A DNA stretch of 64,000 nt, from IMG/VR virus record IMGVR_UViG_3300023174_000040, positions 1 to 64,000 of that record, one strand, 5' to 3'. A program made the position numbers and the translations under genes. Within the stretch, counting starts at the first letter, position 1; every line of letters starts with the position of its first letter. The notes beneath the pieces are model-generated. The model saw nothing but the letters and a program-made list of their open reading frames with translations. It was not told the origin of the DNA and did no database searches. Shown in pieces: positions 1 through 16,428 of this stretch.

Positions 1-125
1 CTGTAGTAGGTGCTGCTGTAGTAGGTGCTGCTGTAGTAGGTGCTGCTGTAGTAGGTGCTGCTGTAGTAGGTGCTGCTGTAGTAGGTGCTGCTGTAGTAGG
101 TGCTGCTGTAGTAGGTGCTGCTGTA
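1..125. repeat. 15-bp tandem repeat CTGTAGTAGGTGCTG x8, encoding TTAAP on the - strand
   Basis: Eight perfect copies read directly. Confidence 0.97.
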
Positions 126-1156
126 GTCGTAGTGCCTGGTATAGGAGGCAAAGTTTCGCAATTTACCGAGTATATAAACTCATTATCATACACAGAGTTG
201 GCGCCACTAGCGGATATATAAAGCTTATCTCCTATGCTATTTAAATCTACCCCGCTAATATACCTGAAAGAATCAGGATTATTTTGATCAATTATATTTG
301 CCCAATAATTTCCCCCATCTTTACTAACTCTATATGAATACGAACCAGCCGCTCCGGCTAAAATTGTGCTAAAGTCATCCGAACAAGCTAATTGCGATGC
401 TATTATGTCCACTCCGACCCAGGTAGACCCGCCGTTTCTACTAATAAATGACCCATAAACTGTTTGACTGTTACATGGGGTGTCATTGAATTTTTCTCTG
501 ATTGAAGCCATCATAGAGGTGCCATTGCTTGACATACAGCAAGCATATAATTGTTCACAATCCGCTTGCTCGTTTAATGCCACGGGTAACGTGCGTACAC
601 TCCAGGACAGCCCAGAATCGTTACTTATATAAACATTGGATTTTCCTGTAGCCAATACTGTATTACCATCACTTGAGCAAGATATGGATGTAAAGGGCTC
701 TAATCCCGATGTAATTTTTGTCCAAGTATCTCCTTTATCTGTGCTTTTGTAAAAATAACCTGTTAAACTCGCATAAAGACCAGGCACTATAAAAATAGTA
801 TCTCCACTATATGATGAGCAAATTATTCTAGATTCTGTAGGAGTAAATTCCTGTAATGGGAGACCCGGTTGTTTATTGACCCAGGTGTGTCCGCTATCCT
901 GAGATACATATATATTATTGTATGTGTAGCGTGATATAAAAATTCCTATTTGACCGTCGCCAGAAATATGAGAAAATCCATTACCTGGGGAATTGATTTT
1001 TTTCACCCATGTACTACCAGAATCTGTGCTGCGGTATAAACCATCATACCGTTTAATACACACTATTTTCGTGCCATTGGAAGAACAAGATACGGATCGC
1101 CAGTCTCCGGGAATATTAATAATTTTAGTTAGATAATTACATGTATTATTGCTCAT
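1..1156 (-). CDS. Asp-box/BNR beta-propeller protein with Thr/Ala/Pro-rich tail; 3' end runs off the window start (absent from the ORF track)
   Basis: ATG at 1156. Manual translation gives MSNNTCNYL... with Asp-box motifs YRSTDSGSTW, YVSQDSGHTW, FYKSTDKGDTW, ISNDSGLSW, ISRNGGSTW, then (TTAAP)n. Confidence 0.85.
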   Translation of the reverse strand, partial: MSNNTCNYLTKIINIPGDWRSVSCSSNGTKIVCIKRYDGLYRSTDSGSTWVKKINSPGNGFSHISGDGQIGIFISRYTYNNIYVSQDSGHTWVNKQPGLPLQEFTPTESRIICSSYSGDTIFIVPGLYASLTGYFYKSTDKGDTWTKITSGLEPFTSISCSSDGNTVLATGKSNVYISNDSGLSWSVRTLPVALNEQADCEQLYACCMSSNGTSMMASIREKFNDTPCNSQTVYGSFISRNGGSTWVGVDIIASQLACSDDFSTILAGAAGSYSYRVSKDGGNYWANIIDQNNPDSFRYISGVDLNSIGDKLYISASGANSVYDNEFIYSVNCETLPPIPGTTTTAAPTTAAPTTAAPTTAAPTTAAPTTAAPTTAAPTTAAPTT

Positions 1157-1276
1157 GAATTTTTTTCTTTTTTATTTAATTAAAATATATAGTTGTAAAG
1201 ATAATAGAAAATTACTATTAAAGTTTAATATATACTAATAGTTGGCAATGATGCCAGCCTTAACAAGGAGGTATGA

Positions 1277-1732: not shown

Positions 1733-1744
1733 TAGTTTATGTAG

Positions 1745-1781
1745 ATTCCCCCTCTCCTAACCGGGAGGGGGAATTTTTTTT
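1745..1781 (+). terminator. intrinsic terminator
   Basis: 12-bp stem ATTCCCCCTCTC/GGGAGGGGGAAT followed by a T-tract. Confidence 0.8.
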
Positions 1782-2602: not shown

Positions 2603-2608
2603 GATTAT

Positions 2609-2636
2609 ATTATCTATATTTTTTGTTTTTTGTCAA
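2609..2636 (-). promoter_or_regulatory. sigma70-type promoter; probably leaderless transcript of the DUF6065-like gene
   Basis: TTGACA-16-GATAAT on the - strand; the ATG lies 7 nt beyond the -10 box. Confidence 0.55.
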
Positions 2637-2708
2637 ATTTTTGAGAAAGAATAAAAATACACACTATATTGATTTTGGAAGATTACACATTAAGATGAAA
2701 GGAATTAT

Positions 2709-2915
2709 ATGCTAGTTCTCAGTAGAAAAAAGGATGAGACAATTGTTCTGAAGAGCCCAGGTGCCGACGATATCAAAATCACCGTTGTCAGGATTGACAA
2801 CCGCAATAAAGTTCGTATAGGTATAGATGCTCCTCAAGAAGTCACCGTAATCAGATCTGAATTAGAAAATAAAAATTTATCTAGCGATCTAAGCGATGAT
2901 CTCCGAGTGGATTGA
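2709..2915 (+). CDS. csrA: carbon storage regulator CsrA/RsmA homologue
   Basis: MLVLSRKKDETIVL...VRIGIDAPQEVTVIRSEL, the canonical CsrA signature. Confidence 0.93.
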   Translation: MLVLSRKKDETIVLKSPGADDIKITVVRIDNRNKVRIGIDAPQEVTVIRSELENKNLSSDLSDDLRVD

Positions 2916-2973
2916 GCAAACCATGGAATAGATCTGGGTAATGTCTAAAGAATCGATTTTTTAATAGGCCGAC

Positions 2974-3138: not shown

Positions 3139-4173
3139 TCATTTTAAAATTTTAACAAATTTGGCACACTTTGAATAATCTTTAAGGTTTTTGGCTCCAA
3201 TATAAGCTCCACAAGATCTTATTCCTCCCAAGATTTCTTGAATAACATCTGCTACCGGGCCTTTGTAGGGTATTTTAGATACCTTGCCTTCTGAAGCTCT
3301 GTATTCTTTTTTGCCAACTCCATGCTTTTCTTGTGCGTAATGGGAGCTCATTCCATAGAATGTAAGTGCGGATTTATTTTTTTCCGCATCATATTCCCAT
3401 TCTCCTTCGCATTCATCTGTGCCTGCAAACATGCCTCCCAACATGATCCAATCGGAACCACCACATAATGCTTTGCATATATCGCCAACATCTTTGCAAC
3501 CACCATCACTCATAACCAAACCTAACCTGCTTTTATTTGATTTTAAACCATGGGCGGCATGAGAACATTCTTGTACACATGAAAAAGTTCCATATCCAAC
3601 ACCTGTCATTTTTCTGGTTTCGCATTGAGATCCTGGGCCTATTTGGATTTTACAAATATCAACTTTCCCGTGAATTATAAGCTCTTCACATATTTCTGGT
3701 GTTGTGACATTCCCGGCACAAATTATACTATCTGGAAACTCTTCTCTTACTTGTGCGCAAAATTTAACAAAAGATTCCATATAGCCATTGGGAACGTCTA
3801 TTACTATATTTGGATTTTTATTTAGATCTATAGAAACCTTTTTTATTTTTTTAATATCTTCTTCTGATTTCCCTATTGTTGCCCAAGCGTAATCAGTTCC
3901 AACTTCATTGATTATTTTACTTAAGTCTTTGTGGGAATAATATTTGTGAAGTGCAGTAACAATTTTATAGTTCGATAGTTTTTTTGCCATTGCCAAAGAT
4001 GTAAGAGGAACCATGTTTGAACACATGATTGGAATTCCCTCCCAAATCCTTGGAGAGTTATAAAAATAAAATTTTCTCTCTACGATAACTTCGCTTCTAC
4101 TTTCAAGAGTGGTTCTCTGAGGAACAATTAATACGTCTTGAAAATCTAATTTAAAATCTTGTGAAATAATCAT
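3139..4173 (-). CDS. guaC: GMP reductase
   Basis: KLDFQDVLIVP, DVPNGY, AGNV, IGPGSQCETRKMTGVG, FYGMSS, EYRASEGK, GGIRS motifs; no CBS domains. Confidence 0.93.
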   Translation of the reverse strand: MIISQDFKLDFQDVLIVPQRTTLESRSEVIVERKFYFYNSPRIWEGIPIMCSNMVPLTSLAMAKKLSNYKIVTALHKYYSHKDLSKIINEVGTDYAWATIGKSEEDIKKIKKVSIDLNKNPNIVIDVPNGYMESFVKFCAQVREEFPDSIICAGNVTTPEICEELIIHGKVDICKIQIGPGSQCETRKMTGVGYGTFSCVQECSHAAHGLKSNKSRLGLVMSDGGCKDVGDICKALCGGSDWIMLGGMFAGTDECEGEWEYDAEKNKSALTFYGMSSHYAQEKHGVGKKEYRASEGKVSKIPYKGPVADVIQEILGGIRSCGAYIGAKNLKDYSKCAKFVKILK

Positions 4174-4182
4174 AATAAACTC

Positions 4183-4629
4183 CTAGTACTTATATCCTCT
4201 GACAACTTCTTCTTTAGTAATCTTTATTGCTTTAAAGAATTTAAGGCTATTTTTGTCATGAGGTATAACCTTAATTTTTTTACCAAATTTTATCTCTGCA
4301 GTTTTTTTGGCTTTTTCTAATATCGTAGTGCCAAATTTTTTACGTCTATATTTTGTTTTTACGTAGATATAAGTTCTTACGGAATTGCTATTTTTGGATA
4401 AAAAGAAATCCAACATAGACCATCCAATTAATTTTTTTTTATCATACAAACAGACAGCAAAATAACTATTTTTTTTTCTTTTTTTGCTTAATATCACTCC
4501 TTCTCTCATATAGTCATCGCCAAGAGGAGTGGAAGATAATAGAGTTTTATACTCTTTTTTGCAATTTTTTAAATCTTTTATGACCCAATTCATGAATTTG
4601 ATTATACATATACCAGTTCTATTAATCAA
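4183..4629 (-). CDS. GNAT-family acetyltransferase-like protein
   Basis: YIYVKTKYRRKKFGTTIL resembles GNAT motif A. Confidence 0.6.
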   Translation of the reverse strand: MINRTGICIIKFMNWVIKDLKNCKKEYKTLLSSTPLGDDYMREGVILSKKRKKNSYFAVCLYDKKKLIGWSMLDFFLSKNSNSVRTYIYVKTKYRRKKFGTTILEKAKKTAEIKFGKKIKVIPHDKNSLKFFKAIKITKEEVVRGYKY

Positions 4630-4669: not shown

Positions 4670-6427
4670 ATGCCTACCACCACTAGCGATCCAACCACAA
4701 CAGCACCCACTACGACTATCCGCCCAGGCTGCCCAGAAATTCCGCAGAACTGCTGTGACATTCCATGTAAAACTTTTGCTTTAAACAAAGTTAAAAATGA
4801 CTGTCCGACAGACAAAACTATGACTTGGATTGCTGATTTAGGTTATGATAAATTATATTTTAAATTTGATGAAAATGATCTTCATATAACAAGTAAAAAT
4901 AATATTTCTTGTTTCAATCAAATAATACTAGATTATAAAAATAAGATTAAAGATGGGACTTTGGTTAGTTTGATACAAGATTGTATTACGACTCCTGCAC
5001 CAACTACTACTTCGGCTCCTTGCTTTTTGAGACCGTCCGGTTGTCAAAACATTCAGACTGGATTGGATAGTACGGGAATTGTTTTCTTGAGAGGATTAAA
5101 TTCTAACGCCACTATGCAAGGAAGATTTTTTGCAATAGGTCCTGATGACATTAATAACCCCACAGGTACTTGGGTTTTTTATGGTGAAAATCAATCAGGT
5201 AGATTTATTGATAATGAATATGTTTGTTTTACGCTACCTAGTAGTTATAAACTTAATTTAGAAAATTACATAGGCATACAAGATGGATCCTGCTATTTAG
5301 CAAAAAAGACCACATTATTATCTATTGAAAATCCATGTGTTCGGCCGGGAGTATTTCCCAATAGTGATTATTTGGCTTTGTATTGCGGTCCAACCGACAC
5401 TACATCTCCACCCAACACTACATCTCCACCTAATACTACATCTCCACCCAATACTACATCTCCACCCAATACTACATCTCCACCCAATACTACATCTCCA
5501 CCCAACACAACGCCTGCTCCATGTTGGTCTTTTAATCAATGTACAGATTTAGAGTGTTTTTCTGTATCGTGTCAGACTGGTGGTTATTCTAGTAGAAGTG
5601 ATTGTGAATCTAACCTTAATGGAGATTGCAATCCCCCTCCAAATTCAATTGAATGTTGGGAGTGCCCTTCGTGTAATTCAATTTTTGTTCAACCTAGTTC
5701 TGAATTCGGCGGAGTTTCCCAAACTTGTGAAAATCTTGGATTTTTTAGTAGCCTTGCATCTTGCCAATCATCTGGTTGCGAGGCTCAACCCACAACAACC
5801 ACACATGGTCCGTGCTGTCCTGGCGAATTAACAATGAACGTTAAATATAGTAACACAGAGGGGCCTTGTCCTGGTGGACATCAATGTGATGGGGCTACTT
5901 TTTATGTTAAAGTTAATGATACTGTATTGGGAACCGCTAATCTGGATAATATGATTGACGGAGGAGATAGAGCAGCAGGATTTAGTATTCCAAGTGAGCT
6001 TATCGGTGAAGGCGGAGTGGTTTCATTTGAATTGGTTTGCGTTGAAGGTGAATCTTGGGGTGGCCCGAATATAGATCCTCAATTTCCTGGATGTCACACT
6101 ACCGTTGAATGGGTTCAAATTCTTGATAATGGGGTTGAAATATTCAACGCTTGCGTTTCTGCTGGTTCGGTGACCACAGTTGGCCGATGTGATGATCCCT
6201 CGCAATGCGGGCCTACTACATCACCGCCTACAACATCAACATCCCCGCCTACAACATCCCCGCCTGACAATTGTACGATTGAAAATTGCGGAGGCTTTCC
6301 TTGCCCCAACCCCTCAGATAAATGCTGCGGAGACAATGCTGGTAACTGTGGTTGTTGCTCAGAAACTACTTGGGTTTGTTGCCCAGATCAAACATATTGC
6401 GCAGCATCCTTGGGTGATTGCCCTTAG
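4670..6427 (+). CDS. Cys-rich, Thr/Pro-rich modular protein (putative virion appendage)
   Basis: Thr/Pro linkers, a GPCPGGH domain and a C-terminal Cys-rich module; no signal peptide. Confidence 0.8.
   Translation: MPTTTSDPTTTAPTTTIRPGCPEIPQNCCDIPCKTFALNKVKNDCPTDKTMTWIADLGYDKLYFKFDENDLHITSKNNISCFNQIILDYKNKIKDGTLVSLIQDCITTPAPTTTSAPCFLRPSGCQNIQTGLDSTGIVFLRGLNSNATMQGRFFAIGPDDINNPTGTWVFYGENQSGRFIDNEYVCFTLPSSYKLNLENYIGIQDGSCYLAKKTTLLSIENPCVRPGVFPNSDYLALYCGPTDTTSPPNTTSPPNTTSPPNTTSPPNTTSPPNTTSPPNTTPAPCWSFNQCTDLECFSVSCQTGGYSSRSDCESNLNGDCNPPPNSIECWECPSCNSIFVQPSSEFGGVSQTCENLGFFSSLASCQSSGCEAQPTTTTHGPCCPGELTMNVKYSNTEGPCPGGHQCDGATFYVKVNDTVLGTANLDNMIDGGDRAAGFSIPSELIGEGGVVSFELVCVEGESWGGPNIDPQFPGCHTTVEWVQILDNGVEIFNACVSAGSVTTVGRCDDPSQCGPTTSPPTTSTSPPTTSPPDNCTIENCGGFPCPNPSDKCCGDNAGNCGCCSETTWVCCPDQTYCAASLGDCP
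5399..5506. repeat. 18-bp tandem repeat x6 encoding TTSPPN
   Basis: ACTACATCTCCACCYAAY units. Confidence 0.95.
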
Positions 6428-6443: not shown

Positions 6444-6451
6444 ATATATAA
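6444..6451 (+). promoter_or_regulatory. putative late promoter ATATATAA, 3 nt before ATG
   Basis: Recurrent motif; no SD present. Confidence 0.55.
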
Positions 6452-6454: not shown

Positions 6455-9400
6455 ATGCCAAATATTATTGATCATATCATAGTTGAAATTGATTGGACCA
6501 ACAGTGGAATTAACGATCTAGACACAACACTGACGGTCGCAGATATCAACGATAGCGGACAAACATTATACCCTCCCGGCTGTCCCGATTCTGATATTAA
6601 CTCAGTTTGTGCTGATTACACAGGTCCAGTTGGAGCTTGTACTGATAATTTAGCTGATTATGTTGAATATGCTGGAGATCATACAGGGATTGGCAAAGAA
6701 TCTTTTGTTGTTCGTGTTGACAATATATTAAGCAGCTTTCCATCGGCGCTTATTTTGGATTTGCTTCCAAAAGCTCAATGGGGTCACATATTGAGTCAAG
6801 AAGAAAGAGGCTCTATAAATAATGTAGGATTTATAAGAATTAATTATAAATTATATTCTGGTGGAGTTGCTTCTGTAGTGTCTGGGCAATACATCTCAAG
6901 TGGAACTCTGGTTAAAAGTCTTTATACTCTGGTGGATCCTGACGTGCTACTAGGGTCATCTAAATTGTCGTGCTGTCTTGTTGGTGGCAATAAAATTCAA
7001 TCTTGCAATGATTTTGTTTGTTTAGATGTTTTTAGAATAAACTGGGATACCGGTAGTTTAGATGCTTATCAGAACCCTCCTGCGGAGAACAGGATATATG
7101 TAGACCTTACTGTTTTAGAGGGTTATTGTGATCGTAGTTGTGAATGCCCTGCAACTACAACTTCAGGCCCAACAACTACAACAACCACTACAACCACTAC
7201 AACATCACCCCCATGCGCAGATTCTAGCATGTTGTATTTGGGTGCAGCCATAGGTCCTCATGCTCCATACGGAGTGACGGTTCTTCCTAATTTAGCCTTG
7301 TATAAATATGATATAGCTTCTAAAAAATCAACTAGAATAAGTCACGATGTATGGGGAGACCCTATTCTTGGAGATTATTTTCCAACAAATCCTAACTGTA
7401 TCGATATAGCTCATACTAAAAACAAATTTTGGATTGGACCCGTCAATGGTGTCCACCCACCAGATTTTGAACATGGCATAGGGGGATATTGTGATGGTTC
7501 AATAATAACTGAGTGGGATATCGAGTCCTTTGAACCGTTCACAATGTCATATAAAAGGCAATTAATTTTATCTGATTCTGTGCCTAATTTTGGAATGAGT
7601 TGCGATGGAGATGAGACTATCATTACAACCAAAGCAGAGGATCCCTTATACCCAGAAGGCGGTGGCAGAATCATAGTTGGAGTTGACACAAACAATACAA
7701 GTTCTGTGACCGTGCGTGCCGAACTACCAACAAACTGCAGCTTAAGTAGTGCTGCTGATATATGCCTTACAAGCAATGGAAAGCTAATAGTTTCATGCGG
7801 TTGCATGATTACAAGCCCATCTTGGAACATACTAGTGTATGATTATGAATCTGGTTTGTTGGAAAAAAACTATGATATAACAACATCATTAATTGGTTGC
7901 AACTCTTTCCGTGCTGGCTATGGCGGAGTCACAGGTCTGGGTGGAGCAGGTGAAGATATATATCTTTTTACAATTTGCGGCGATGTTTATAAAATGAATT
8001 CCGATGGCACTCTTACCCTTTATGATGAAATAGGAAGAGATCTTTGGGATGAATATAACGATACCCTTGTTTATGGCGGGTATAAAAGTGGACAAAATAC
8101 AAAATTACAAATTTTTGCAGCATCCCAAATAAAGGATTGTATAACTCAGTCTTTGCCTTCTTCATGTAGTTGTAATTCAGTAACAGATGATTGTAATATT
8201 ATTTCTGTTTTTATAGATATTCCTCGTTCTATAATAGCTCCCGTAACAACAACCGTCAATCCCAATGATTGTAATATTTATTTATATGCATGGGGAAATA
8301 ATTTGTTTGGACAAATTGGTGATGGAACACAATTTGAAACCCCTGGGTTTTCCGGTGGCCAAGTTCGTCATAAATTGGTTGGAAATGGATTTGCTAAATT
8401 ATCAAGTGGTGAGAATCACAGTCATTTCTTAGCAATAAAGTCTAATGGAGATTTATATTCTTGGGGCAAAAATTTATATGGAGAGATTGGCAACAACACC
8501 AGAACTGACTCGTTTAACCCAGTTAAAATCGGAGAAGATTATATAGAAGTGAGTGGGGGATCGTATGCTTCTTTTGGCATAAAAAGCAATAGTGATTTAT
8601 ATGCATGGGGAGATGTTGTTGGCGATAACAAACTAGATTATAACACTCCAACCAAAATAGGTGAAGGCTACAAAAAGGTTTCAGCTGGCGAACAATTTGT
8701 TTTTGCAATAAAGTCCAATGGAGATTTATATAGTTGGTGGTATAACTCCATAAACAGCCCAAAGTTTGGGCCAAATAATTATATTCCAACTAAAATAGAT
8801 GAAGATATAGTTGCGGTAAACAGTGGAGATGGAGGTGGAATTGCATTAAAATCCAATGGTGATTTATATCTGATAGCCTATGATGAGTTTTATAATTTTT
8901 CTATAAAAACAAAATTGGGAGAGGGTTATAAAGTAATGGCTCCCGGACATGGGTGGAATGGATACGCCCAGCAACAATACACCCCGTCATTGGCGGCGAT
9001 TAAAAATAATGGAGAGTTACATGTTTGGTACGTCACGGATGATGTTGTTGGAGACTTTCAAATAATTGAAGGTGATTGGCTAGAGGTTAGCACTGGCGAG
9101 GATTTTGTTTTGGCTCTGCGAACAAACGGAGACGTATATGCTTGGGGAGGCAACTTCAAAGCAGCAGGGACATCTCGTCAATCCTCGACGCCAATAAAAA
9201 TTGGCGAGGGCTATTCTTCTATAGCTACATCGGACTGGACCAGTTATGGACTAAAATATAGTTGCCCCACTACAACTACAACAACAACAACAATTGCTCC
9301 TGCGATTATATCCGGAACACTATGGGCTTGGGGATATAACGGGAAGGGACAACTTGGAGATGGAACAGTTTTAGCTAAATCATCACCCATCCAAATAGGT

Positions 9401-10915
9401 TCTGATAATGATTGGAAATCTATAATTGCTAATTCTGGGACAAACCCGGCATCACACACCATGGCCCTAAAAACTAATGGAACACTATGGGCTTGGGGAT
9501 ATAATGAATTTGGCCAACTTGGAGATGGAACAGTTGTTGATAAATTATCACCCATCCAAATAGGTTCTGACAGTGATTGGGAATCAATAAGTGTTGGATC
9601 TAATTTTACCATTGCAATAAAAACTGATAGAACACTATGGGCCTGGGGAAATAATCTAAAGGGTCAGCTTGGAGACGGAACCGGGATCAACAAGAATTCT
9701 CCTATTCAAATAGGTTCTGATAATGATTGGGAATCAATAAGTGCTGGAGGAGAATCTGCTTTTGCCCTAAAAATCAATGGAACACTATGGGCTTGGGGGC
9801 TGAGTCGCTTCTGTCAGCTCGGGAATGGAATGTCTTCTCCCAACCAACTCTCTCCCATCCAAATAGGTTCTGGCAGTGATTGGAAATTAATAAGTACGGG
9901 AGAGAACTCTACCATTGCTCTAAAAAATGATGGAACACTATGGGCTTGGGGATATAATGAATTTGGTCAACTTGGTGTCGGACCGCCTAGATCAACATTA
10001 GACACCCCTACCTTAATAGGCTCCGACAATGATTGGAAATCAATAAGTGTTGGAGGAAATTTTGCCATTGCCCTGAAAACTAATAGAACACTATGGGCTT
10101 GGGGATATAATGGACAACACCAACTTGGAGACGGGACCTGGGTCGATAAAACTTCTCCTGTCCAAATAGGTTCTGATAATGATTGGGAATCAATAAGCGC
10201 TGGAACAGCTCATACTGTTGCCCTAAAAACTAATGGAACATTATGGGCTTGGGGGGCTAATGGATCAGGACAACTTGGAAAGGGTGACCCCTCAGCCCCC
10301 TACTGGGGCAGCATTGCCCAGGTAGGTTCGGATACATGGCACACCGCAATTGCCGGTATTGGGGATAGTCTGGGTATAAAGTCTAATAACACAAACACTA
10401 CAACAACTATTGCTCCAACCACAACTACAACTGTTGCTCCAATCACAACCACTGTTGCTCCAACCACCACAACCGTAGCCCCAGATCCATTTGTTTGTGT
10501 GAGTGGTTCTGTAAATTGCCGAGCAGTTATAACTGATGATATTTGTGCTAATGATCCACCTCAATGCGGCACTTCTGCAAATACATTTATAGGAGGGTTT
10601 GGATCCAATATATGTCAGGCAAAACCGGTAGGAGCAAGTACTTTTGGTAATATTTTCTTAAATTGTCAAATTCAGAATTCCAATGATTATCAGGTCGGTA
10701 TCAGCATGTGTCTTTGGGACGGAAGTATAAATCTTGTGAATTTAAGCATATACGGATTTAATGTTAATTCATATATCTTTATTTCAGATGCTGAAAAAGA
10801 CGTTCCATCTGGATCTACTTCTTCTTATACTCCTTATAACGGCAGGTATTTAATAGTATCACATGGTCCTTTCTACTCAGTATTGCGAAAAGTTGGTAAC
10901 AACGATCAGCCCTGA
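6455..10915 (+). CDS. large RCC1-repeat adhesin-like protein with Thr-rich linkers
   Basis: Two RCC1 blocks (about 8280-9260 and 9313-10390; LWAWGYNxxGQLGDGT...QIGSDxDW); N-terminal domain paralogous to ORF 11054. Confidence 0.88.
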
Positions 10916-11042: not shown

Positions 11043-11050
11043 ATATATAA
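11043..11050 (+). promoter_or_regulatory. putative late promoter ATATATAA, 3 nt before ATG
   Basis: Same context as 6444 (ATATATAAAATATGCCAAAT). Confidence 0.55.
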
Positions 11051-11053
11051 AAT

Positions 11054-12160
11054 ATGCCAAATATTATTGATCACATCATAGTTGAAATTGATTGGACCAC
11101 CAGCGGAATTAATGGTCTGGATACGACACTAACAGTTGCTGATATATCGGATAGCAGCCACACATTCTACCCGCCCGGTTGCCCTAGTAGCGATATAAAT
11201 TCAGTTTGCGCCAATTATATCGGCCCAGTCGGAGCCTGCACTGATAATTTAGCCAATTATGTTGAATACGCTGGAGACCACACAGGTGTTGGCAAAGAAT
11301 CTTTTGTTGTTCGTATAAGTGGCCCCAATAGTATAACAAGTGATTTCCCGACTGCCGACAATATTTTATTGCTTCCTAAAGCCCAATGGAGTCACAATTT
11401 AAAAAAAACCGAGAAAGATGCAATAAACATAGGCTTCATTAAAGTAAAATATGAATTATATTCTGGCGGGATTGCTTCTGTGGTAGATGGTCAATATGTT
11501 TCAAATGGAGCACTAGTAAAAACTCTCTACACCCTTGTAGATCCAGATATGATGTTAGGATCAGCGGGATCTAAATTAAGATGTTGTCTTCTAGGTGGAT
11601 CCAAGGGTCAATCTTGCGATAATTTTGTTTGTGTAGATGCTCTAAGAATAAACTGGGTTAGTGGTTTAAACGGCTACCAGAACCCCCCTGCGGAGAATAG
11701 AATATACACAGATCTTAATATTTTAGAGGGTTATTGTGATCGTAGTTGTTGTAATATTTTGATTACCGACATTGTAATATCAGAAACTTTTAGCAATGGC
11801 GACAAAACCTTTAAATTAACATTAGACCATCAGACTAACTGTTGTGAAGCCAAAGCCAGTATCGCTGGAGCGCCTTACATTTATGCAAAAGATGTTAGAT
11901 GTAAAAATAACTTGGTTTTTGCCACAGTTAATATACCAGGTCCTACTGAAAATACTAATGTTTGTTTTAAAATGGATTGTTGTAGTTCTTCTTCAGGTTG
12001 TACCACTGAAGATTGCGGAGGTTTTCCTTGTTCCAACCCCCTGACAGATAAATGCTGCTCAGATGGCGCTGGCAACTGTGGTTGCTGTCCGGAAATTACT
12101 TGGGTTTGTTGCCCAGGTCAAGTATATTGTGCGGCATCCTTGGGAGATTGTCCTCCTTAG
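11054..12160 (+). CDS. modular Cys-rich protein; N-terminus paralogous to ORF 6455, C-terminus to ORF 4670
   Basis: 51 of the first 60 aa are identical to ORF 6455; CGGFPC...YCAASLGDCP tail shared with ORF 4670. Confidence 0.85.
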   Translation: MPNIIDHIIVEIDWTTSGINGLDTTLTVADISDSSHTFYPPGCPSSDINSVCANYIGPVGACTDNLANYVEYAGDHTGVGKESFVVRISGPNSITSDFPTADNILLLPKAQWSHNLKKTEKDAINIGFIKVKYELYSGGIASVVDGQYVSNGALVKTLYTLVDPDMMLGSAGSKLRCCLLGGSKGQSCDNFVCVDALRINWVSGLNGYQNPPAENRIYTDLNILEGYCDRSCCNILITDIVISETFSNGDKTFKLTLDHQTNCCEAKASIAGAPYIYAKDVRCKNNLVFATVNIPGPTENTNVCFKMDCCSSSSGCTTEDCGGFPCSNPLTDKCCSDGAGNCGCCPEITWVCCPGQVYCAASLGDCPP

Positions 12161-12240
12161 CTTTAAACATACAATCTTGTGATTAGACATTAATTTCGAC
12201 TAGTTTAATTATATATAACTTTACCAAAAGTAATTAAATA

Positions 12241-15200
12241 ATGTCAAAAGAAATTGAAAAAAAACTAGAAAAGTTAGACGTAACAACCACAATATCTCCT
12301 TGTGCTTCCTTGCCTTTAGGTGACTCAGATGTTGATTGTGGAGCATGGTGCCCAGATCCATTGTTAAATTGTTGTGAATGGCTGGCTGGACCGGAAGCCT
12401 ACGCAAGAATTCAAGACCCCATCACTTCATGTTATTTTGGATATACATTAGGTAAAATGGATTGTTGTCATTACGGAGCGGGCAGCGTGCTCATCGCCTG
12501 TGATTGCCCTCCCATTGGAAGTTGTTCTAACGAGATTTGCATAGTAGTTCCTCCTCCTGGCACTACAACAACTCCTCCCCCGGTGTGCTTCGGCTTGCCC
12601 GATTTAAGCGGTTATTTAGTTGAAGCAATGTATAGCGATACTGATGGTCCTTGTCCTGGAGGTCATGCCTGTAGTAGAGCTCGTTTTAATTTATATGTTA
12701 ATAATAACTGGATCATGGAGGTAAATTTAAATAATGATTGCCCAGTAGGTAGATCCAACCAGGTCACTGGTGATAAGATCTCGTCGTCAGTACTGCCAGG
12801 GGGCACCGTCGCAGAAGATGGAGTTTTTAAATTTTTCTTACAATGTTGTTGTTGTACCGACGTTCAGGGAGTAGACATGTTGTCTTCTGGTCCACCTGCA
12901 ATTGCAGGGAATGTTGCGACGTGCACTATTTCTACCACAACTACAACCACAACAACAACCACTACAACAACAACTACTACAACTCAAGGTCCTTGTTATT
13001 TTGTAATAGATGATGATTTTTTTGGAACTGGTCACTGGGAAGGTGACTGTTGTTGGTGCCGAACGACTTGTATAGCCGGCCACCCAAGTAACCCGATTTG
13101 CTATAAGTGTCCTTGCTGCTCTCCAGCAGGAAGTAGTACTGCAGTTTTTTCAGAATATCAATCCTGTGATGACTCTAGGATAAATTGTGACCCAGGACCT
13201 GATAATGTCTGCACTACTACAATTGAACCCACAACCACAACTACGACTACAACTACAACTACAACCACAACCACTGGTCCTGGCAACTGTCGTCATACCG
13301 GCTGTCATGATGGAATAACTTGGTTCAGAATTACAAGTCCAGAAGGCGAGGTTGTATTAAGTCAGTGTTTTGTAAATGATATCATAACCGTATTAGATTC
13401 AGAGTGTACTACCACAACAAGTACCACCACAACAACTATTGAGCCTACTCCAACTTTAACAGAAACCCCAGGTTTAACTAGAACACTTACCCTAACGCCA
13501 ACTTTAACAAAAACTCCAACTCAAACCTTGGTTCCTTGTGAATTGTATGCTTGGGGAAATAATTCTAATGGTCAACTTGGAGATGGCACAACTATTAATA
13601 AGTACACCCCAACATTTATAGGAAATTTTTCCAAACTATCCGTTGGTGAAAATCATACTCATTTTTTAGCAATTAAGTCAAATGGAGATTTATATGCTTG
13701 GGGAAATAATTCTAATGGTCAACTTGGAGATGGCACAACCACTGACAGATCAATACCAACAAAAATAGGCACAGATTTTATTGAAGTTTCTGGTGGCACT
13801 GCTGAATCGTTTGCAATAAAATCTAATGGAGATTTGTATGCTTGGGGCAATGGAGGTTACGCAGGCTCACAACTCCCAATTGTTCCTACAAAAATAGGAA
13901 GTGAATTTTCGGCTGTTAGTTGTGGTGAAATCGGAGCGGTGGCACTAAAGACTAATGGGGATATATATAAGATCTCTATTGACCAAATAATCACCGGACC
14001 GATTGATAGCGGATTTATAAAAATTTGTGCTGGCGAGATTGATTATGTGGCACTAAAAAATGATGGAAATGCCTATATTGGCAATCTTTCTAATTCACAA
14101 TTTTATAAAGCAGGTTCGGGTGGTTACATCGATATTAGCATTCACCAGTTGCCATTTGGAATCAAGTCTAACGGTTTTATATACTTGTTGCAAGGTCCAG
14201 ATACTGAAGCTCTTGTTTTTAGCGATCATAATTATAAAATGATAAGAGGGTTGGAGAATAGCAGCGACGGCTTTTTATTGTTAACAAATGACGGTGATAT
14301 ATATTCCTTGAGTTTAGGCGGAGTTGGGAGAAAAATAGGAAGTGGTTTTGACTATATTAGTGCCGGAGACGTCTCTTTTTATGGTTTAAAATGTGCATTA
14401 AGCCCTCCAACCTTAACTAGAACCCTCACCCCAACTCCAACTTTAACCTTAACTTTTACTTCTACCCCTGGTTTAACAAATACACTTACTTCCACACCCG
14501 ATTTAACAAAAACACTTACTTCTACTCCAACACTTACTTTTACCCCAACATTAACAAAAACTCCAACTCTAACAAAAACGCTTACTTCAACTCCAACTCT
14601 AACAAAAACGCTTACTTCAACTCTAACTTTAACACCAACTTTAACTCCCACCCCATCCGCAACAAGATGGTTGACAAAAACTCCAACTTCGACTCCGACA
14701 CTTACTTCGACTCCAACTTTAACAAAAACTCAAACCCATACCCCAACCCTAACTAGGTCATCAGGACCAAATCCAACTCCAACTCTCACAAGAACGTTTG
14801 GCTTAACTCCAACGCCAACTATAATGCCATGTTCTTGCAACATGGAAGAATACACACTTGAGTTGGTGTTCAAGCCAGAGCCAGACAACACAACATTTGG
14901 TAAATTAATAGATTTTAAAGGCAAATCTTCAGATAATGGAATTTATATATATGATAATGGAGCAAATCTTTATATATCATATATACCAGGAGGTTACGTA
15001 GGTCAAACTGAACTCGAAGTCAATGATTATAACCAACTGGTCATCACAAGAAATAAAAATACTAAAAATGTTTGTGTATTTTTAAATAAAATTAAACAAT
15101 TTGAATTTACAGACACGGCAGGCAATGTAGTGTTAAATGATAATATATGGTTGTTTGTAGATGATGATATTACTGCTGTTGAAAATATCGGCAATAGAGT

Positions 15201-16428
15201 TTCTAAAATTAAGTTATTTGCTGAATATTACACGCAACAAGAAATAATTAATCTTCCAATATTTCATGGAAAAATATCAGGCTGTTCACCAGAGGATCCT
15301 TGGACTAGACCAACAACCACAACTCCTGCTCCGCAATCTTATTGTTCTATAAATAGTATAGAAGATATACCTAGTAGTTTATTTTTAAGTATAGATTGTG
15401 AATATGATGAAATAACCACCTCTATTCCAACCACAACAGTCTCTCCTTCTACTACGACAACTACTACTATTTCCCCAACAACAACAACGACAACAACAAT
15501 CTCTCCGTTATGTCTGCCGGAAATCCCACAGAACATAGCCATAGAATGTGTAAACCCGGGAGACACTTCCTCATCAGTATTGGCTTCAATTTCTTGGGAA
15601 TATCCAACTTATTTGTGTAATATACCTAACTGGATGACTGTTTATGTCATAGAGGCAATGTACAATGCCGAAGACCCAGGCTCTAATTGGGTTGAGAAAG
15701 ATTCATTTTTTGCAAGTCTTTATAGTGGCCCCAATCTGGGCACCATACCCAGGGTATCCCGCACTTTTCAAATAAGTAGAGCTCTAGGAGATCACCGATT
15801 TAGAGTTACTGCTGCCCTTATTCAGGTAGGCACTCTATGGGATCATAACACCTCTCGCTCTGTTATTACATCTACAATTAATTGGAATAATTGCGCTTTA
15901 TTAGCAACAAACACTCCTACTCCAACCCCGACTATTACCCCAACTAGGACTTTAACTCCCACCCCCACACAGGCACCAGCCCCAACCAATACTTCTACAT
16001 TAACTTCAACTCCAACAATCACAAAGACATCTACATCTACTTTAATAAATCCCGATTTAACACAAACGCCAACTTCAACTTTCACAAATACTCCAACCTT
16101 GACTCCAACTGGGACATCAACCCCAACCTTAACACCAACCTTAACACCAACCTTAACAAATACCACGACATCAAATAACCCGACTAACACACCAACTTTA
16201 ACAAGAACATCTACTAACACACCAACTTTAACAAGAACATCTACTAACACACCAACTTTAACAAGAACATCTACTAACACACCAACTTTAACAAGAACAT
16301 CTACTAACACACCAACTTTAACAAGAACATCTACTAACACACCAACTTTGACACCAACATTAACAAGAACTCAAACTCCATCTGCAGCAAATCCAAGTTT
16401 GAAAGTTCTCTGGGTTTCTTTCGTATAA
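12241..16428 (+). CDS. large mucin-like modular protein (Cys-rich, RCC1 repeats, LamG/ConA-like, beta-sandwich, Thr/Pro tails)
   Basis: LYAWGNNSNGQLGDGTT repeats; ELVFKP...IDFK...LVITRN LamG-like segment; long TLTPT stretches. Confidence 0.85.
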   Translation: MSKEIEKKLEKLDVTTTISPCASLPLGDSDVDCGAWCPDPLLNCCEWLAGPEAYARIQDPITSCYFGYTLGKMDCCHYGAGSVLIACDCPPIGSCSNEICIVVPPPGTTTTPPPVCFGLPDLSGYLVEAMYSDTDGPCPGGHACSRARFNLYVNNNWIMEVNLNNDCPVGRSNQVTGDKISSSVLPGGTVAEDGVFKFFLQCCCCTDVQGVDMLSSGPPAIAGNVATCTISTTTTTTTTTTTTTTTTTQGPCYFVIDDDFFGTGHWEGDCCWCRTTCIAGHPSNPICYKCPCCSPAGSSTAVFSEYQSCDDSRINCDPGPDNVCTTTIEPTTTTTTTTTTTTTTTGPGNCRHTGCHDGITWFRITSPEGEVVLSQCFVNDIITVLDSECTTTTSTTTTTIEPTPTLTETPGLTRTLTLTPTLTKTPTQTLVPCELYAWGNNSNGQLGDGTTINKYTPTFIGNFSKLSVGENHTHFLAIKSNGDLYAWGNNSNGQLGDGTTTDRSIPTKIGTDFIEVSGGTAESFAIKSNGDLYAWGNGGYAGSQLPIVPTKIGSEFSAVSCGEIGAVALKTNGDIYKISIDQIITGPIDSGFIKICAGEIDYVALKNDGNAYIGNLSNSQFYKAGSGGYIDISIHQLPFGIKSNGFIYLLQGPDTEALVFSDHNYKMIRGLENSSDGFLLLTNDGDIYSLSLGGVGRKIGSGFDYISAGDVSFYGLKCALSPPTLTRTLTPTPTLTLTFTSTPGLTNTLTSTPDLTKTLTSTPTLTFTPTLTKTPTLTKTLTSTPTLTKTLTSTLTLTPTLTPTPSATRWLTKTPTSTPTLTSTPTLTKTQTHTPTLTRSSGPNPTPTLTRTFGLTPTPTIMPCSCNMEEYTLELVFKPEPDNTTFGKLIDFKGKSSDNGIYIYDNGANLYISYIPGGYVGQTELEVNDYNQLVITRNKNTKNVCVFLNKIKQFEFTDTAGNVVLNDNIWLFVDDDITAVENIGNRVSKIKLFAEYYTQQEIINLPIFHGKISGCSPEDPWTRPTTTTPAPQSYCSINSIEDIPSSLFLSIDCEYDEITTSIPTTTVSPSTTTTTTISPTTTTTTTISPLCLPEIPQNIAIECVNPGDTSSSVLASISWEYPTYLCNIPNWMTVYVIEAMYNAEDPGSNWVEKDSFFASLYSGPNLGTIPRVSRTFQISRALGDHRFRVTAALIQVGTLWDHNTSRSVITSTINWNNCALLATNTPTPTPTITPTRTLTPTPTQAPAPTNTSTLTSTPTITKTSTSTLINPDLTQTPTSTFTNTPTLTPTGTSTPTLTPTLTPTLTNTTTSNNPTNTPTLTRTSTNTPTLTRTSTNTPTLTRTSTNTPTLTRTSTNTPTLTRTSTNTPTLTPTLTRTQTPSAANPSLKVLWVSFV
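16183..16349. repeat. 30-bp tandem repeat x5 plus a partial copy, encoding TNTPTLTRTS
   Basis: Perfect ACTAACACACCAACTTTAACAAGAACATCT units. Confidence 0.97.

What the first reader, a model, noticed from the sequence alone, without database searches (positions are those of the whole stretch)
1..16428. Battery of signal-less mucin-like modular proteins
Five large ORFs (1-1156, 4670, 6455, 11054, 12241) combine propeller, LamG, beta-sandwich and Cys-rich modules; four carry Thr-rich linkers, and 11054 shares its modules with two of them. Similar linkers recur at 21298, 23190, 25881, 56689 and 57846. Two linker grammars appear: poly-Thr/TTAAP/TTSPPN and alternating T-x (TPTLTRT). None of these proteins has a signal peptide and several follow the late-type ATATATAA motif. 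A virion fibre or brush role is therefore the simplest inference. Perfect tandem DNA repeats (15, 18 and 30 bp) could give rapid linker-length variation.
Basis: partly seen in the sequence, partly recalled or inferred. Interest (0 to 1): 0.72.

Follow-up and report, generated by a model that had tools for sequence, protein, structure and literature searches.

The report
Shuffling adhesin-like gene battery, huge phage
A huge T4-like freshwater bacteriophage (not a giant eukaryotic virus) carries a cluster of signal-less "beads-on-a-string" proteins whose binding modules are joined by threonine-rich linkers, and near-identical phage populations differ almost only by linker repeat counts and by whole modules swapped at those linkers, as expected of fast-evolving host-attachment proteins.

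Summary
Five large ORFs combine RCC1 and BNR propellers, a probable LamG, beta-sandwiches and Cys-rich modules. Four have Thr-rich linkers, none has a signal peptide, and the 15, 18 and 30 bp tandem repeats are real.

The virus is not a giant eukaryotic virus. It is a 323-kb fragment of a T4-like huge phage from lake metagenomes, with gp23 capsid protein, T4-type terminase and strong Shine-Dalgarno use.

Sister contigs show how the locus evolves. At 99.97% identity, with no amino-acid substitution in three proteins, the alleles differ only by whole repeat units (4 x 30 bp, 1 x 18 bp, 2 x 18 bp, 7 x 15 bp). At 98-99% identity, modules are replaced, deleted or added, and five of eight breakpoints lie in linker-coding DNA.

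One shared module folds confidently as a beta-sandwich. It is an unannotated family that lies in tail or structural gene modules of Verrucomicrobia prophages and other phages.

Best reading: a hypervariable cassette of virion-displayed glycan or cell-surface adhesins (confidence about 0.5). Display on the virion, "late" timing and glycosylation are all unproven. The battery also runs past the window start, because the contig breaks inside a repeat.

The parts
2..1156 (-). BNR/sortilin-type beta-propeller protein, cut off at its 3' end by the contig end. The full gene reads propeller, (TTAAP)n, small Cys-rich module, (TTVAP)5, C-terminal module B.
   Evidence: Pfam Sortilin-Vps10/BNR. The contig starts inside the repeat. 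Full-length 528 and 493 aa alleles in L039 and L040 end in module B, 76% identical to the ORF11054 C-terminus.
1..127 (-). Perfect 15-bp tandem array encoding TTAAP. It is the site where the assembly broke.
   Evidence: TRF: 8.5 copies, 100% matches. Sister alleles differ by 7 units.
4670..6427 (+). 585-aa protein. N-terminal T-linker, two orphan modules (aa 17-240), TTSPPN x6, Cys-rich module (285-372), module C beta-sandwich (380-507), TSPP linker, module B (535-585).
   Evidence: No Pfam or PHROG hit. Alleles of 578, 573, 561 and 553 aa, and a truncated allele of about 250 aa, exist elsewhere.
5399..5505 (+). 18-bp tandem array (TTSPPN). It is the left breakpoint of an 862-nt deletion seen in two other metagenomes.
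   Evidence: TRF: 5.9 copies, 96%. L024 and L025 join 5415 to 6278.
6444..6451 (+). ATATATAA motif ending 3 nt before the ATG of ORF6455. There is no Shine-Dalgarno site.
6455..10915 (+). 1486-aa protein. Module A (aa 1-230), poly-Thr, unassigned domain (262-600), RCC1 propeller (610-934), poly-Thr, RCC1 propeller (956-1310), T-linker, C-terminal domain (1345-1486).
   Evidence: Pfam and PHROG RCC1 hits, BLAST, linkers. The sister allele is 2309 aa, with module A replaced and about 980 aa added. An 892-aa allele is on record.
11043..11050 (+). ATATATAA motif ending 3 nt before the ATG of ORF11054.
11054..12160 (+). 368-aa linker-less protein: module A, small middle domain, module B.
   Evidence: Nearly orphan in 5.8 billion proteins. 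No match in phage records or IMG/VR. The fold prediction failed.
12211..12218 (+). ATATATAA motif 22 nt upstream of ORF12241.
12241..16428 (+). 1395-aa protein, 19.6% Thr. Cys-rich N-terminus, module C (127-202), poly-Thr, Cys-rich module D (249-318), poly-Thr, T-x linker, RCC1 propeller (434-717), long T-x linker, probable LamG (about 870-1010), T-linker, fn3-like sandwich (about 1095-1220), 160-aa T-x tail.
   Evidence: The sister allele has the RCC1 propeller replaced by a DUF642-like domain, plus linker-unit insertions. The 99.97%-identical allele lacks 4 units.
16183..16360 (+). 30-bp tandem array encoding TNTPTLTRTS.
   Evidence: TRF: 5.9 copies, 97%. About 1.9 copies in L036, with no other change in the protein.
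16442..17809 (+). NAL1-like (trypsin-fold) protease paralog, 13 nt downstream of ORF12241. It is one of three such paralogs, each directly after a large T-linker protein.
   Evidence: PHROG 'protease' E 1.8e-10. Paralogs at 62706 and in L040.
18409..20848 (-). Glycosyltransferase-like genes next to the battery: a weak GT-D-like hit and a GT47 exostosin-like hit.
   Evidence: Pfam.
21298..25091 (+). Two paralogous M43-like peptidase proteins, each with a T-x linker and an fn3 domain.
   Evidence: Pfam. 64% identical to each other. One 18-bp unit fewer in L036.
25881..28136 (-). 751-aa protein with a coiled-coil centre and a Cys-rich C-terminus that contains a five-Thr mini-linker.
   Evidence: Sequence.
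56689..62696 (+). T-linker protein that hits a 'virion structural protein' PHROG, then a 1616-aa S8 subtilase with a T-linker.

Best explanation
What it is. The locus is a hypervariable cassette region of a huge T4-like freshwater bacteriophage. It encodes accessory, adhesin-like 'beads-on-a-string' proteins. Each is a chain of small binding modules joined by flexible Thr or Thr-Pro linkers. The modules are RCC1, BNR and SBBP propellers, LamG-, DUF642- and CBM-like beta-sandwiches, fn3 domains and disulfide-type Cys-rich knots.

How the proteins reach their site (inferred). They are made in the host cytoplasm without secretion signals. They reach the outside with the virion at lysis. They are most likely displayed on the tail or capsid as flexible fibres or decorations that bind host-surface glycans or proteins. 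The C-terminal Cys-rich module B ends three different proteins and is the best candidate for a common docking or targeting element.

How the locus evolves (shown). The linker-coding DNA is made of short in-frame tandem repeats of 15, 18 and 30 bp. It changes in two ways. First, repeat units are gained and lost faster than point mutations accumulate. Second, the similar linker sequences serve as in-frame joints at which whole modules are swapped, deleted or added between paralogs. The binding repertoire is therefore reshuffled between otherwise near-identical phage populations.

Not shown. Virion display, the ligands, the expression timing and any glycosylation of the linkers are inferred or untested.
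For: Phage identity
- gp23 capsid protein, E 2.9e-90.
- T4-type terminase, 52% identical to the 595-kb uncultured phage LR756511.1.
- Prohead protease.
- Shine-Dalgarno sites in 95 of 429 genes, against 16 at control positions.
- Found in lake and freshwater metagenomes from many studies.

Module network
- Module A occurs in 2 genes, B in 3, C in 3, RCC1 in 2 and the DUF642-like module in 3.

Repeat-count change
- L036/L040 are 99.97% identical to the window, with zero substitutions in three proteins.
- They differ by 4, 1 and 2 repeat units. The two sister contigs L039 and L040 differ from each other by 7 TTAAP units in the BNR gene.

Module exchange
- In L023 (98% identity), module A is replaced by a Cys-rich module that is paralogous to ORF12241 aa 249-318.
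- L023 also has a 2.9-kb in-frame extension with fn3 and propeller modules.
- In L023 the RCC1 propeller is replaced by a DUF642-like domain, 65% identical to a module of a neighbouring battery gene.
- The same module-A replacement appears in an independent run.
- An 862-nt linker-to-linker deletion appears in two further metagenomes.
- Five of eight breakpoints lie within 10 nt of linker-coding DNA, which makes up 10.9% of the region (P 7e-4).
- The flanks are collinear.

Virion association (indirect)
- Module C is a conserved family: 44 aligned sequences give a model with pLDDT 85.
- About 60 module-C relatives in 1.8 billion representative proteins, and nearly all lack signal peptides.
- P0009 carries it at the C-terminal part of a 1456-aa tail protein with a GTA_TIM host-specificity domain, in a prophage tail module.
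- In a Chthoniobacteraceae chromosome it lies between the tape measure, a tail protein and a tail fibre.
- In an SU10-like phage it lies just after the portal and capsid genes.
- Other T-linker proteins of this genome hit virion-structural and baseplate-wedge PHROGs, and some sit beside the head module.
- ORF56689 hits a virion structural PHROG.
- phAPEC6 carries 11 RCC1-like paralogs. Its virion proteome lists 'DNA condensation proteins' gp003, gp005 and gp007, taken here to be those paralogs, and it has unassigned hairy fibres (PMC7247149).
- An RCC1 protein sits right after the large lytic-transglycosylase gene of Pseudomonas phage Ppr_SeaP2, which I read as the tail-fibre position.

Extracellular character
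- Linkers are flanked by Cys, Cys content is 7.6-7.9%, and CBM-like folds are present.
Against: - None of the five focal proteins has a direct match to a proven virion protein, apart from generic RCC1 and the uncharacterised module C.
- The genes lie more than 250 kb, in contig coordinates, from the head genes found here (about 275-292 kb).
- No trimerisation or fibre motif was detected.
- No constant terminal module anchors every member. Module A of ORF6455 is itself swappable.
- A natural frameshifted allele truncates ORF4670. The proteins are therefore dispensable, which fits any accessory role, not only a virion role.
- Module C matches solved folds only weakly (best Z 5.2), so carbohydrate binding is a guess.
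- Repeat counts come from short-read assemblies, which can collapse tandem arrays. Unitigs break at the arrays.
Confidence: 0.55

Rival explanations
1. The proteins are not part of the virion. They are released into the water at lysis as free proteins. They bind or degrade host envelope or extracellular polymers, or they act as decoys, for the benefit of progeny phage.
For: - Several T-linker proteins carry enzymes rather than pure binding modules: M43-like peptidases and an S8 subtilase, and a possible trypsin-like domain in the L023 extension (read by eye).
- No common virion-anchoring module exists.
- A truncated natural allele shows the proteins are dispensable.
- Lack of signal peptides fits release by lysis.
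Against: - Module C homologs sit inside tail and structural gene modules.
- Related T-linker proteins hit virion-structural and baseplate PHROGs.
- Free proteins would be diluted at once in lake water, which makes selection for them weak.
Confidence: 0.2
2. The proteins act inside the infected cell, or inside the capsid. For example, the RCC1 propellers might organise packaged DNA, as was suggested for phAPEC6, or they might take part in host takeover.
For: The phAPEC6 authors proposed that virion-associated RCC1-like proteins are DNA-ordering inner-body candidates (PMC7247149). Lack of signal peptides is compatible with this.
Against: - Disulfide-type Cys-rich knots, CBM-, LamG- and DUF642-like sandwiches, fn3 domains and long Thr/Pro linkers are hallmarks of extracellular proteins.
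- The RCC1 propeller is interchangeable with a DUF642-like sandwich at the same position. That is hard to reconcile with a DNA-organising core function.
- Fast module turnover fits an arms-race interface.
Confidence: 0.08
3. The proteins are mucin-like fibril proteins of a giant eukaryotic (NCLDV-type) virus, expressed from a late promoter.
For: The base composition is AT-rich, the linkers are Thr-rich, the genome has several glycosyltransferases, and an AT-rich motif sits close to start codons.
Against: - There is no NCLDV capsid protein or PolB.
- T4 gp23, T4-type terminase and prohead protease are present.
- Shine-Dalgarno sites are strongly enriched.
- The nearest terminases are phage terminases.
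Confidence: 0.01
4. The apparent variation is an artefact of short-read assembly across repeats, through collapsed arrays or chimeric joins. It is not real population variation.
For: Unitigs break at every tandem array. Arrays of 107-178 bp approach or exceed read and k-mer lengths.
Against: - The module-A replacement is seen in two independent data sets.
- The 862-nt deletion is seen in two metagenomes.
- The swapped-in sequences are unique, in frame and paralogous to other battery modules.
- Unit changes occur in four different arrays of an otherwise identical genome.
- A more distant relative (73% identity) also has shorter linkers.
Confidence: 0.05

Closest known systems
Mosaic receptor-binding and tail-fibre proteins of tailed phages (T-even gp37/gp38 adhesins, lambdoid side tail fibres, J/GTA host-specificity proteins)
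   Same: They are accessory virion proteins without signal peptides. Their distal modules are exchanged by recombination between relatives. They sit at the host interface and evolve fast. Module C occurs in a GTA_TIM host-specificity protein and in prophage tail modules.
   Different: No fibre or trimerisation motif and no conserved virion-attachment domain was found here. The architecture is globular modules on long Thr linkers, not a rod. The recombination joints are the repeat-coded linkers themselves. The genes are far from the head genes found here.
RCC1-like paralog arrays of Rak2-like jumbo phages such as phAPEC6, with 'hairy' capsid and tail fibres
   Same: Both are jumbo myoviruses with multiple RCC1-like paralogs. 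In phAPEC6, 'DNA condensation proteins' (taken here to be the RCC1-like paralogs) are listed in the virion proteome, and flexible unassigned appendages are seen (PMC7247149).
   Different: The phAPEC6 proteins are about 40-kDa single-domain proteins. No Thr linkers or module shuffling were reported in the passages read, and their role is itself unknown.
Ig-like and fn3 decoration proteins of phage capsids and tails (T4 Hoc type; from my own knowledge)
   Same: They are non-essential, surface-displayed arrays of small beta-sandwich domains that mediate weak adherence to glycans.
   Different: No Hoc-like capsid-binding domain was detected. Here the modules are far more diverse and are separated by long low-complexity linkers.
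Pro/Thr-rich linkers of bacterial cellulases and cellulosomal proteins, and mucin tandem repeats (from my own knowledge)
   Same: Thr/Pro-rich tandem repeats act as extended spacers between CBM-like and catalytic modules. Copy number is variable and the linkers are potential O-glycosylation sites.
   Different: Those proteins are secreted through signal peptides and glycosylated outside the cytoplasm. Here there is no secretion signal, and any glycosylation would need cytoplasmic phage enzymes.
O-glycosylated virions of mycobacteriophages (Freeman et al. 2023, cited in PMC12619734)
   Same: Phage-encoded glycosyltransferases decorate Ser/Thr-containing extensions of virion proteins. This genome has at least four GT2 genes, one GT47-like gene and sulfotransferase-like genes.
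   Different: In mycobacteriophages the targets are the C-termini of the capsid and tail-tube subunits. Here glycosylation is untested and the candidate targets are internal linkers of accessory proteins.

Membership tests
Nucleocytoviricota (giant eukaryotic virus) | Double-jelly-roll NCLDV major capsid protein | tested here: not met
   PF04451 has no match in the 323-kb record. The control genomes also gave no match, so this search is weak on its own. A T4 gp23 capsid protein is present instead.
Nucleocytoviricota (giant eukaryotic virus) | Eukaryotic host, so no Shine-Dalgarno translation signals | tested here: not met
   GGAG/GAGG lies at -18..-3 in 95 of 429 ORFs, against 16 at control positions.
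T4-like tailed phage (Caudoviricetes, huge phage) | gp23-type HK97-fold capsid protein, T4-type large terminase, prohead protease | tested here: met
   PF07068, E 2.9e-90. Terminase_6N and 6C. PHROG head maturation protease, E 2e-49.
RCC1-like seven-bladed beta-propeller | Tandem RCC1 repeats matching the Pfam RCC1 / RLD models above cut-off | tested here: met
   ORF6455: PF25390 338 bits, PF00415 241 bits. ORF12241: PF00415 74.6 bits. PDB hits to UVR8/HERC2 at E 1e-32 for ORF12241.
LamG / concanavalin-A-like lectin domain | Match to Laminin_G models above the gathering score, or a confident jelly-roll model | tested here: inconclusive
   Laminin_G_3 at E 0.0025, 18.4 bits, against a cut-off of 27.6. 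82 of the 100 nearest named language-model clusters are Laminin_G_3. No structure was predicted for it.
Mucin-like glycoprotein | Ser/Thr/Pro-rich tandem repeats | tested here: met
   TTAAP, TTSPPN, poly-Thr and T-x repeats.
Mucin-like glycoprotein | Dense O-glycosylation of the repeats | not testable with these tools
   Only candidate enzymes are seen: a GT47-like gene, four GT2 genes and sulfotransferase-like genes.
Mucin-like glycoprotein | Entry into a secretory pathway (signal peptide) | tested here: not met
   There is no hydrophobic N-terminus or TM segment in maximal ORFs. 27 other ORFs of the genome have them. This was a hydropathy heuristic, not SignalP.
Phage tail fibre / receptor-binding protein | Homology to, or shared domains with, proven or annotated tail proteins | tested here: inconclusive
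   The five ORFs have no PHROG tail hit. Module C does occur in annotated tail proteins and tail modules elsewhere.
Phage tail fibre / receptor-binding protein | Gene located within the tail or baseplate module | tested here: inconclusive
   The battery is not next to the head genes found here (about 275-292 kb). The record is only 64% complete and the tail genes were not mapped.
Phage tail fibre / receptor-binding protein | Physical presence in the virion; oligomeric fibre | not testable with these tools
   This needs virion proteomics or cryo-EM. No oligomer prediction was attempted, because the module-A model failed.
Contingency-type hypervariable locus (repeat-mediated variation) | Repeat-unit number differs between otherwise identical genomes | tested here: met
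   At 99.97% identity with zero substitutions, four arrays differ by 1-7 units. Caveat: these are short-read assemblies.

The most novel reading that the evidence does not exclude
The Thr-rich linkers are substrates of the phage's own cytoplasmic glycosyltransferases and sulfotransferases. The huge phage would then leave the cell wearing a glycosylated, mucin-like brush. The protein 'bristles' would be docked through the shared C-terminal Cys-rich module B and matured by the dedicated NAL1-like proteases that follow three of the largest genes. The repeat-coded linkers would double as a built-in domain-shuffling device, playing the role that diversity-generating retroelements or shufflons play for other phages.
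Probability: 0.15. Interest if true: 0.8.

Novelty: new variant of a known kind. Interest (0 to 1): 0.55.

Why it matters
Huge phages are known almost only from metagenomes, and how they recognise hosts is unknown. This locus gives a concrete, testable candidate for their host-interaction surface.

It also shows a simple genetic mechanism that can be watched in natural populations. In-frame repeat-coded linkers change length faster than point mutations accumulate, and they serve as joints for swapping whole binding modules.

It defines a conserved, unannotated beta-sandwich domain (signature GPCPGGHxC ... NLNN ... DGGDR) that lies in tail and structural gene modules of diverse uncultured phages and of Verrucomicrobia prophages. 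This gives a host lead and a marker for receptor-binding genes.

If the linkers prove to be glycosylated by the phage's own enzymes, this would extend virion glycosylation from mycobacteriophages to aquatic huge phages.

Tried and rejected
- Giant-virus hallmark searches (NCLDV capsid protein, PolB) found nothing. That frame was dropped.
- ORF11054 is nearly orphan. The word-indexed search of 5.8 billion proteins found only its own cluster and one C-terminal match. There was no match in 50,697 phage records or in IMG/VR.
- A search with the first 600 residues of ORF6455 found only itself, probably because poly-Thr words swamped the candidates.
- PDB sequence searches of ORF4670, ORF11054 and the LamG/fn3 region found nothing useful.
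- ESM Atlas models of ORF11054 and ORF4670 are of low confidence (pLDDT 0.40 and 0.41), so their structural neighbours were ignored.
- AlphaFold2 on full ORF11054 with a 16-row alignment failed (pLDDT 35). Only module B reached 65-79. No fold could be assigned to module A, and no oligomer or complex job was sent.
- Fold searches for module C gave only weak, generic beta-sandwich matches: PLAT, CBM36/60, BcsB and DUF6805, with Foldseek E at best 3e-3, Z at most 5.2 and TM about 0.5. Carbohydrate binding is therefore only a lead.
- BLASTP of the LamG-like region against this genome's own Laminin_G_3 protein found no similarity.
- Laying contigs of four runs could not measure repeat copy number, because unitigs break at the arrays.
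- The record behind L023 is not held for genome search. The BNR protein has only one 26%-identical relative in IMG/VR.
- The 44-row module C alignment was too diverse for a genome scan. An 8-row subset worked.
- A DUF1559 search, used as a Planctomycete host hint, found nothing. The Erv1/ALR sulfhydryl oxidase search was negative, but its controls were silent too, so it is uninformative.
- The 'late promoter' label was tested through the functions of genes that share the motif. They are mixed: helicase, methyltransferase and CCA-adding enzyme, with the prohead protease carrying only a partial motif plus a Shine-Dalgarno site. The label was not adopted.
- A literature hit for 'RCC1' in prasinovirus hypervariable regions turned out to be culture-collection strain numbers.

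Full report
**1. What the sequence is**

The window is the first 64 kb of a 323,267-bp linear IMG/VR record. CheckV rates it 64% complete and its G+C content is 35.8%.

It is not a giant eukaryotic virus.
- Searches for the NCLDV capsid protein and for family-B polymerase found nothing.
- The record encodes a T4 gp23-type major capsid protein (E 2.9e-90), a T4-type large terminase and a prohead protease.
- GGAG/GAGG lies 3-18 nt upstream of 95 of 429 ORFs, against 16 at control positions.
- The terminase is 52% identical to that of a 595-kb uncultured phage, LR756511.1. More distant matches are to Flavobacterium, Microcystis and Synechococcus myoviruses.
- Near-identical DNA occurs in about twenty lake and freshwater sequencing runs from more than ten studies.

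The finding therefore concerns a huge T4-like freshwater bacteriophage. The host is unknown.

**2. Check of the observation**

The five ORFs are real and are maximal frames.

Modules:
- Pfam finds two RCC1 propellers in ORF6455, one in ORF12241, and a BNR/sortilin propeller in ORF 2-1156. Solved RCC1-fold proteins match ORF12241 at E 1e-32.
- The LamG call for ORF12241 (aa about 870-1010) is only probable. The Pfam hit is sub-threshold (E 0.0025). 82 of the 100 nearest named language-model clusters are Laminin_G_3.
- ORF11054 and ORF4670 contain 7.6 and 7.9% Cys, against 1.6% genome-wide.

Linkers:
At 25881 there is only a five-Thr stretch.
- Most linkers are bracketed by cysteines. This suggests that each globular module is closed by disulfides.

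Signal peptides:
- No T-linker protein has a signal-like N-terminus or a TM segment.
- 27 other ORFs of the same phage have obvious signal, lipobox or prepilin N-termini. The absence is therefore specific. This was a hydropathy heuristic, not SignalP.

Tandem repeats:
- 15 bp x 8.5 copies, 100% identical.
- 18 bp x 5.9 copies, 96%.
- 30 bp x 5.9 copies, 97%.

Correction: the contig begins inside the 15-bp array, so ORF 2-1156 is an assembly-truncated gene.

**3. The module network**

BLAST within the genome and against sister contigs defines the shared modules.

| Module | Where it occurs | Identity |
|---|---|---|
| A | N-terminal 230 aa of ORF6455 and ORF11054 | 72% |
| B | About 52-aa Cys-rich module at the extreme C-terminus of ORF4670, ORF11054 and the full-length BNR protein | 65-79% |
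| C | ORF4670, ORF12241 and a 1010-aa gene beyond the window | 36-55% over the conserved core |
| D | Cys-rich module in ORF12241, and in a sister allele of ORF6455 | 60% |
| RCC1 propeller | ORF6455 and ORF12241 | about 39% |
| DUF642-like sandwich | Several genes and alleles outside the window | 30-65% |

Sister contigs show that the battery continues upstream of window position 1. The order there is:
- the full BNR gene (493-528 aa);
- a 641-aa protein with two DUF642-like modules;
- a 1010-aa protein with module C and a run of 42 threonines;
- a NAL1-like protease.

**4. How it varies**

This is the strongest result.

*At 99.97% nucleotide identity.* A 228-kb ENA contig (L036/L040) has no amino-acid substitution in the homologs of ORF6455, ORF12241 and ORF21298. 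The alleles differ by whole repeat units:
- ORF12241: four fewer 30-bp units (-40 aa).
- ORF21298: one fewer 18-bp unit.
- ORF4670: two fewer 18-bp units (573 against 585 aa).
- BNR gene: the two sister contigs L039 and L040 differ from each other by seven 15-bp units (528 against 493 aa).

*At about 98% identity.* A 191-kb JGI contig (L023) shows these changes:
- Linker insertions of 5, 10 and 24 aa.
- Module A of ORF6455 replaced by module D.
- A 2.9-kb in-frame extension that adds linkers, an fn3 domain and propeller modules, giving 2309 aa.
- The RCC1 propeller of ORF12241 replaced by a DUF642-like domain. That domain is 65% identical to a module of a neighbouring battery gene.

*Other evidence.*
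- The module-A replacement is also seen in contigs of an independent run.
- Two further metagenomes, at 99.2-99.7% identity, carry an 862-nt deletion from the TTSPPN array to the next TSPP linker. It frameshifts ORF4670 to about 250 aa.
- Records of 561-aa and 892-aa alleles exist, but without DNA.
- A 73%-identical relative has shorter linkers.

*Breakpoints.* Five of eight breakpoints lie within 10 nt of linker-coding DNA, which makes up 10.9% of the compared region (binomial P 7e-4). The other three lie at the ORF6455 start and stop, where the incoming DNA itself begins with a linker. The flanks are collinear.

*Caveat.* All of these are short-read assemblies, and unitigs break at the arrays. 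The exact repeat counts need long reads. The module exchanges involve unique sequence, and two of them (the module-A replacement and the 862-nt deletion) are each seen in two independent data sets.

**5. What the modules say about function**

A phmmer scan of 1.8 billion representative proteins with ORF4670 gave 84 hits, about 60 of them to module C. Nearly all lack signal peptides.

The 44-row alignment shows the signature YSNT-GPCPGGHxC ... NLNN ... DGGDR ... CH..V.WV. It folds confidently as an eight-stranded beta-sandwich (pLDDT 85, pTM 0.81).

Matches to solved or predicted folds are weak and generic: CBM36/60, PLAT, BcsB and DUF6805, with Z at most 5.2 and TM about 0.5. A carbohydrate-binding role is therefore only a lead.

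The family has no Pfam or PHROG model and is absent from 50,697 deposited phage genomes.

Its genomic contexts are informative:
- The closest outside relative is a 1456-aa tail protein with a GTA_TIM host-specificity domain, in a prophage tail module.
- In a complete Chthoniobacteraceae chromosome it lies between the tape measure, a tail protein and a tail fibre. A Spartobacteria MAG has the same co-directional gene cluster by ORF layout, but those genes were not annotated.
- In an SU10-like phage it lies just downstream of the portal and capsid genes.

Other T-linker proteins of this genome hit 'virion structural protein' and 'baseplate wedge' PHROGs, Laminin_G_3, YHYH and DUF5122 propellers. 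Some lie next to the head genes.

RCC1 proteins occur in other phages:
- One sits right after the large lytic-transglycosylase gene of a Pseudomonas phage. I read this as the tail-fibre position.
- The jumbo coliphage phAPEC6 carries eleven RCC1-like paralogs. Its virion proteome lists 'DNA condensation proteins' gp003, gp005 and gp007, which I take to be those paralogs. It also has unassigned 'hairy' fibres on capsid and tail (PMC7247149).

**6. Most likely mechanism**

Shown:
- The modular architecture.
- The absence of secretion signals.
- The rapid repeat-unit and module turnover at linker joints.

Inferred:
- The proteins are made in the cytoplasm and leave with the virion.
- They act as flexible, multivalent adhesins for host-surface structures.
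- Module B, the only element that always sits at a terminus and that ends three different proteins, is the best candidate for a shared docking or targeting element.

I put about 0.55 on virion-displayed adhesins.

Rivals:
- Lysis-released free exoproteins (0.2). The peptidase-bearing members favour this.
- An intracellular or intracapsid role (0.08).
- Assembly artefact (0.05).
- The giant-virus reading (0.01).

**7. The start-codon motif**

- ATATATAA is not over-represented overall. I counted 54 copies on both strands and estimated about 70 expected from base composition.
- It is sharply positioned: 14 genes have it 3-6 nt before the ATG, and 4 more have it 20-23 nt before.
- Genes with a TATATA-type start (45) and genes with a Shine-Dalgarno site (136) are almost mutually exclusive. 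Only 5 have both.
- This fits a minimal -10-like promoter, comparable to the T4 late promoter TATAAATA (from my own knowledge). It would give leaderless or short-leader mRNAs.
- Genes with the motif include a helicase, a methyltransferase and a CCA-adding enzyme as well as genes beside the head module. 'Late' is therefore unproven.

**8. Comparison and novelty**

The locus works like the mosaic receptor-binding genes of tailed phages and like Ig/fn3 decoration proteins. It differs in three ways:
- It has a beads-on-linkers architecture.
- It uses repeat-coded linkers as both length-variable spacers and recombination joints.
- Most of its modules are uncharacterised.

I rate it a new variant of a known kind.

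The phage also encodes at least four GT2 genes, a GT47-like gene and sulfotransferase-like genes. This keeps open the more novel reading of a glycosylated brush, by analogy with mycobacteriophage virion glycosylation (Freeman et al. 2023, cited in PMC12619734). Nothing here tests it.

Noticed in passing
window 33628, 38881, 39021, 39072, 45297, 52626 (all + strand): The 9-mer TGGTACGGT, within a longer T-rich consensus, occurs 6 times against 0.18 expected. It is always intergenic and upstream of + strand genes: the AAA ATPases, the CobS-like gene and others. It is probably a second promoter or regulatory class, distinct from the TATATA and Shine-Dalgarno starts.
   Followed up: partly
window 16442-17809 and 62706-63998; L040 17942-19231: There are three paralogous NAL1-like (trypsin-fold) proteases. 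Each lies directly downstream (9-14 nt) of one of the largest T-linker proteins (ORF12241, the S8 subtilase ORF57846, and the 1010-aa gene beyond the window). This suggests a dedicated processing or maturation partner.
   Followed up: partly
G000 125201-126052 and 155442-155726 (outside the window): Two phage ORFs begin with prepilin-type N-termini (GFTLVE / TLVELL motifs). Together with module C occurring in Verrucomicrobia prophages, this hints at a PVC-group host. A DUF1559 search was negative.
   Followed up: partly
L030 11551-13113 (-), Chthoniobacteraceae chromosome: A reverse-transcriptase gene lies immediately downstream of the prophage tail-fibre gene, which follows the module C protein. 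It may be a diversity-generating retroelement.
   Followed up: no
window 19916-20848 (-), 51043-52581 (-), 55548-56402 (-): Three genes that are unusual for a phage: a GT47 exostosin-like glycosyltransferase, a GT2/GT7C protein with an O-fucosyltransferase-like N-terminus, and a sulfotransferase. They flank T-linker genes.
   Followed up: partly
window 3139-4173 (-), 4183-4629 (-), 2709-2915 (+): A GMP reductase/IMPDH-family gene, a GNAT acetyltransferase and a CsrA-like small ORF sit inside the battery, between the BNR gene and ORF4670. CsrA is a Pfam call from the sister-contig gene table.
   Followed up: no
window 39134-42140 and 40987-41164: A CobS/MoxR-like AAA ATPase is followed by a CobT-like VWA protein. 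The latter contains a 72-bp x 2.5 near-perfect tandem repeat encoding an acidic stretch.
   Followed up: no
L040 14895-17927 versus L039 14986-16518: The 1010-aa gene beyond the window contains a run of 42 consecutive Thr codons. In the sister assembly L039, no gene is called across about 1.5 kb covering its first half, up to just past that run. This is another likely assembly-fragile or variable site.
   Followed up: no
G000 319805-320269 (-): A small protein ends in eight or more tandem PATEP repeats. This is a different low-complexity grammar, at the other end of the contig.
   Followed up: no
G000 295374-295838 (-): A 154-aa protein next to the head module has a Stig1-like Cys-rich domain (PF04885, E 5.5e-8) and a C-terminal Thr-rich tail. 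It shows that Cys-rich knots plus T-linkers also occur beside core structural genes.
   Followed up: no
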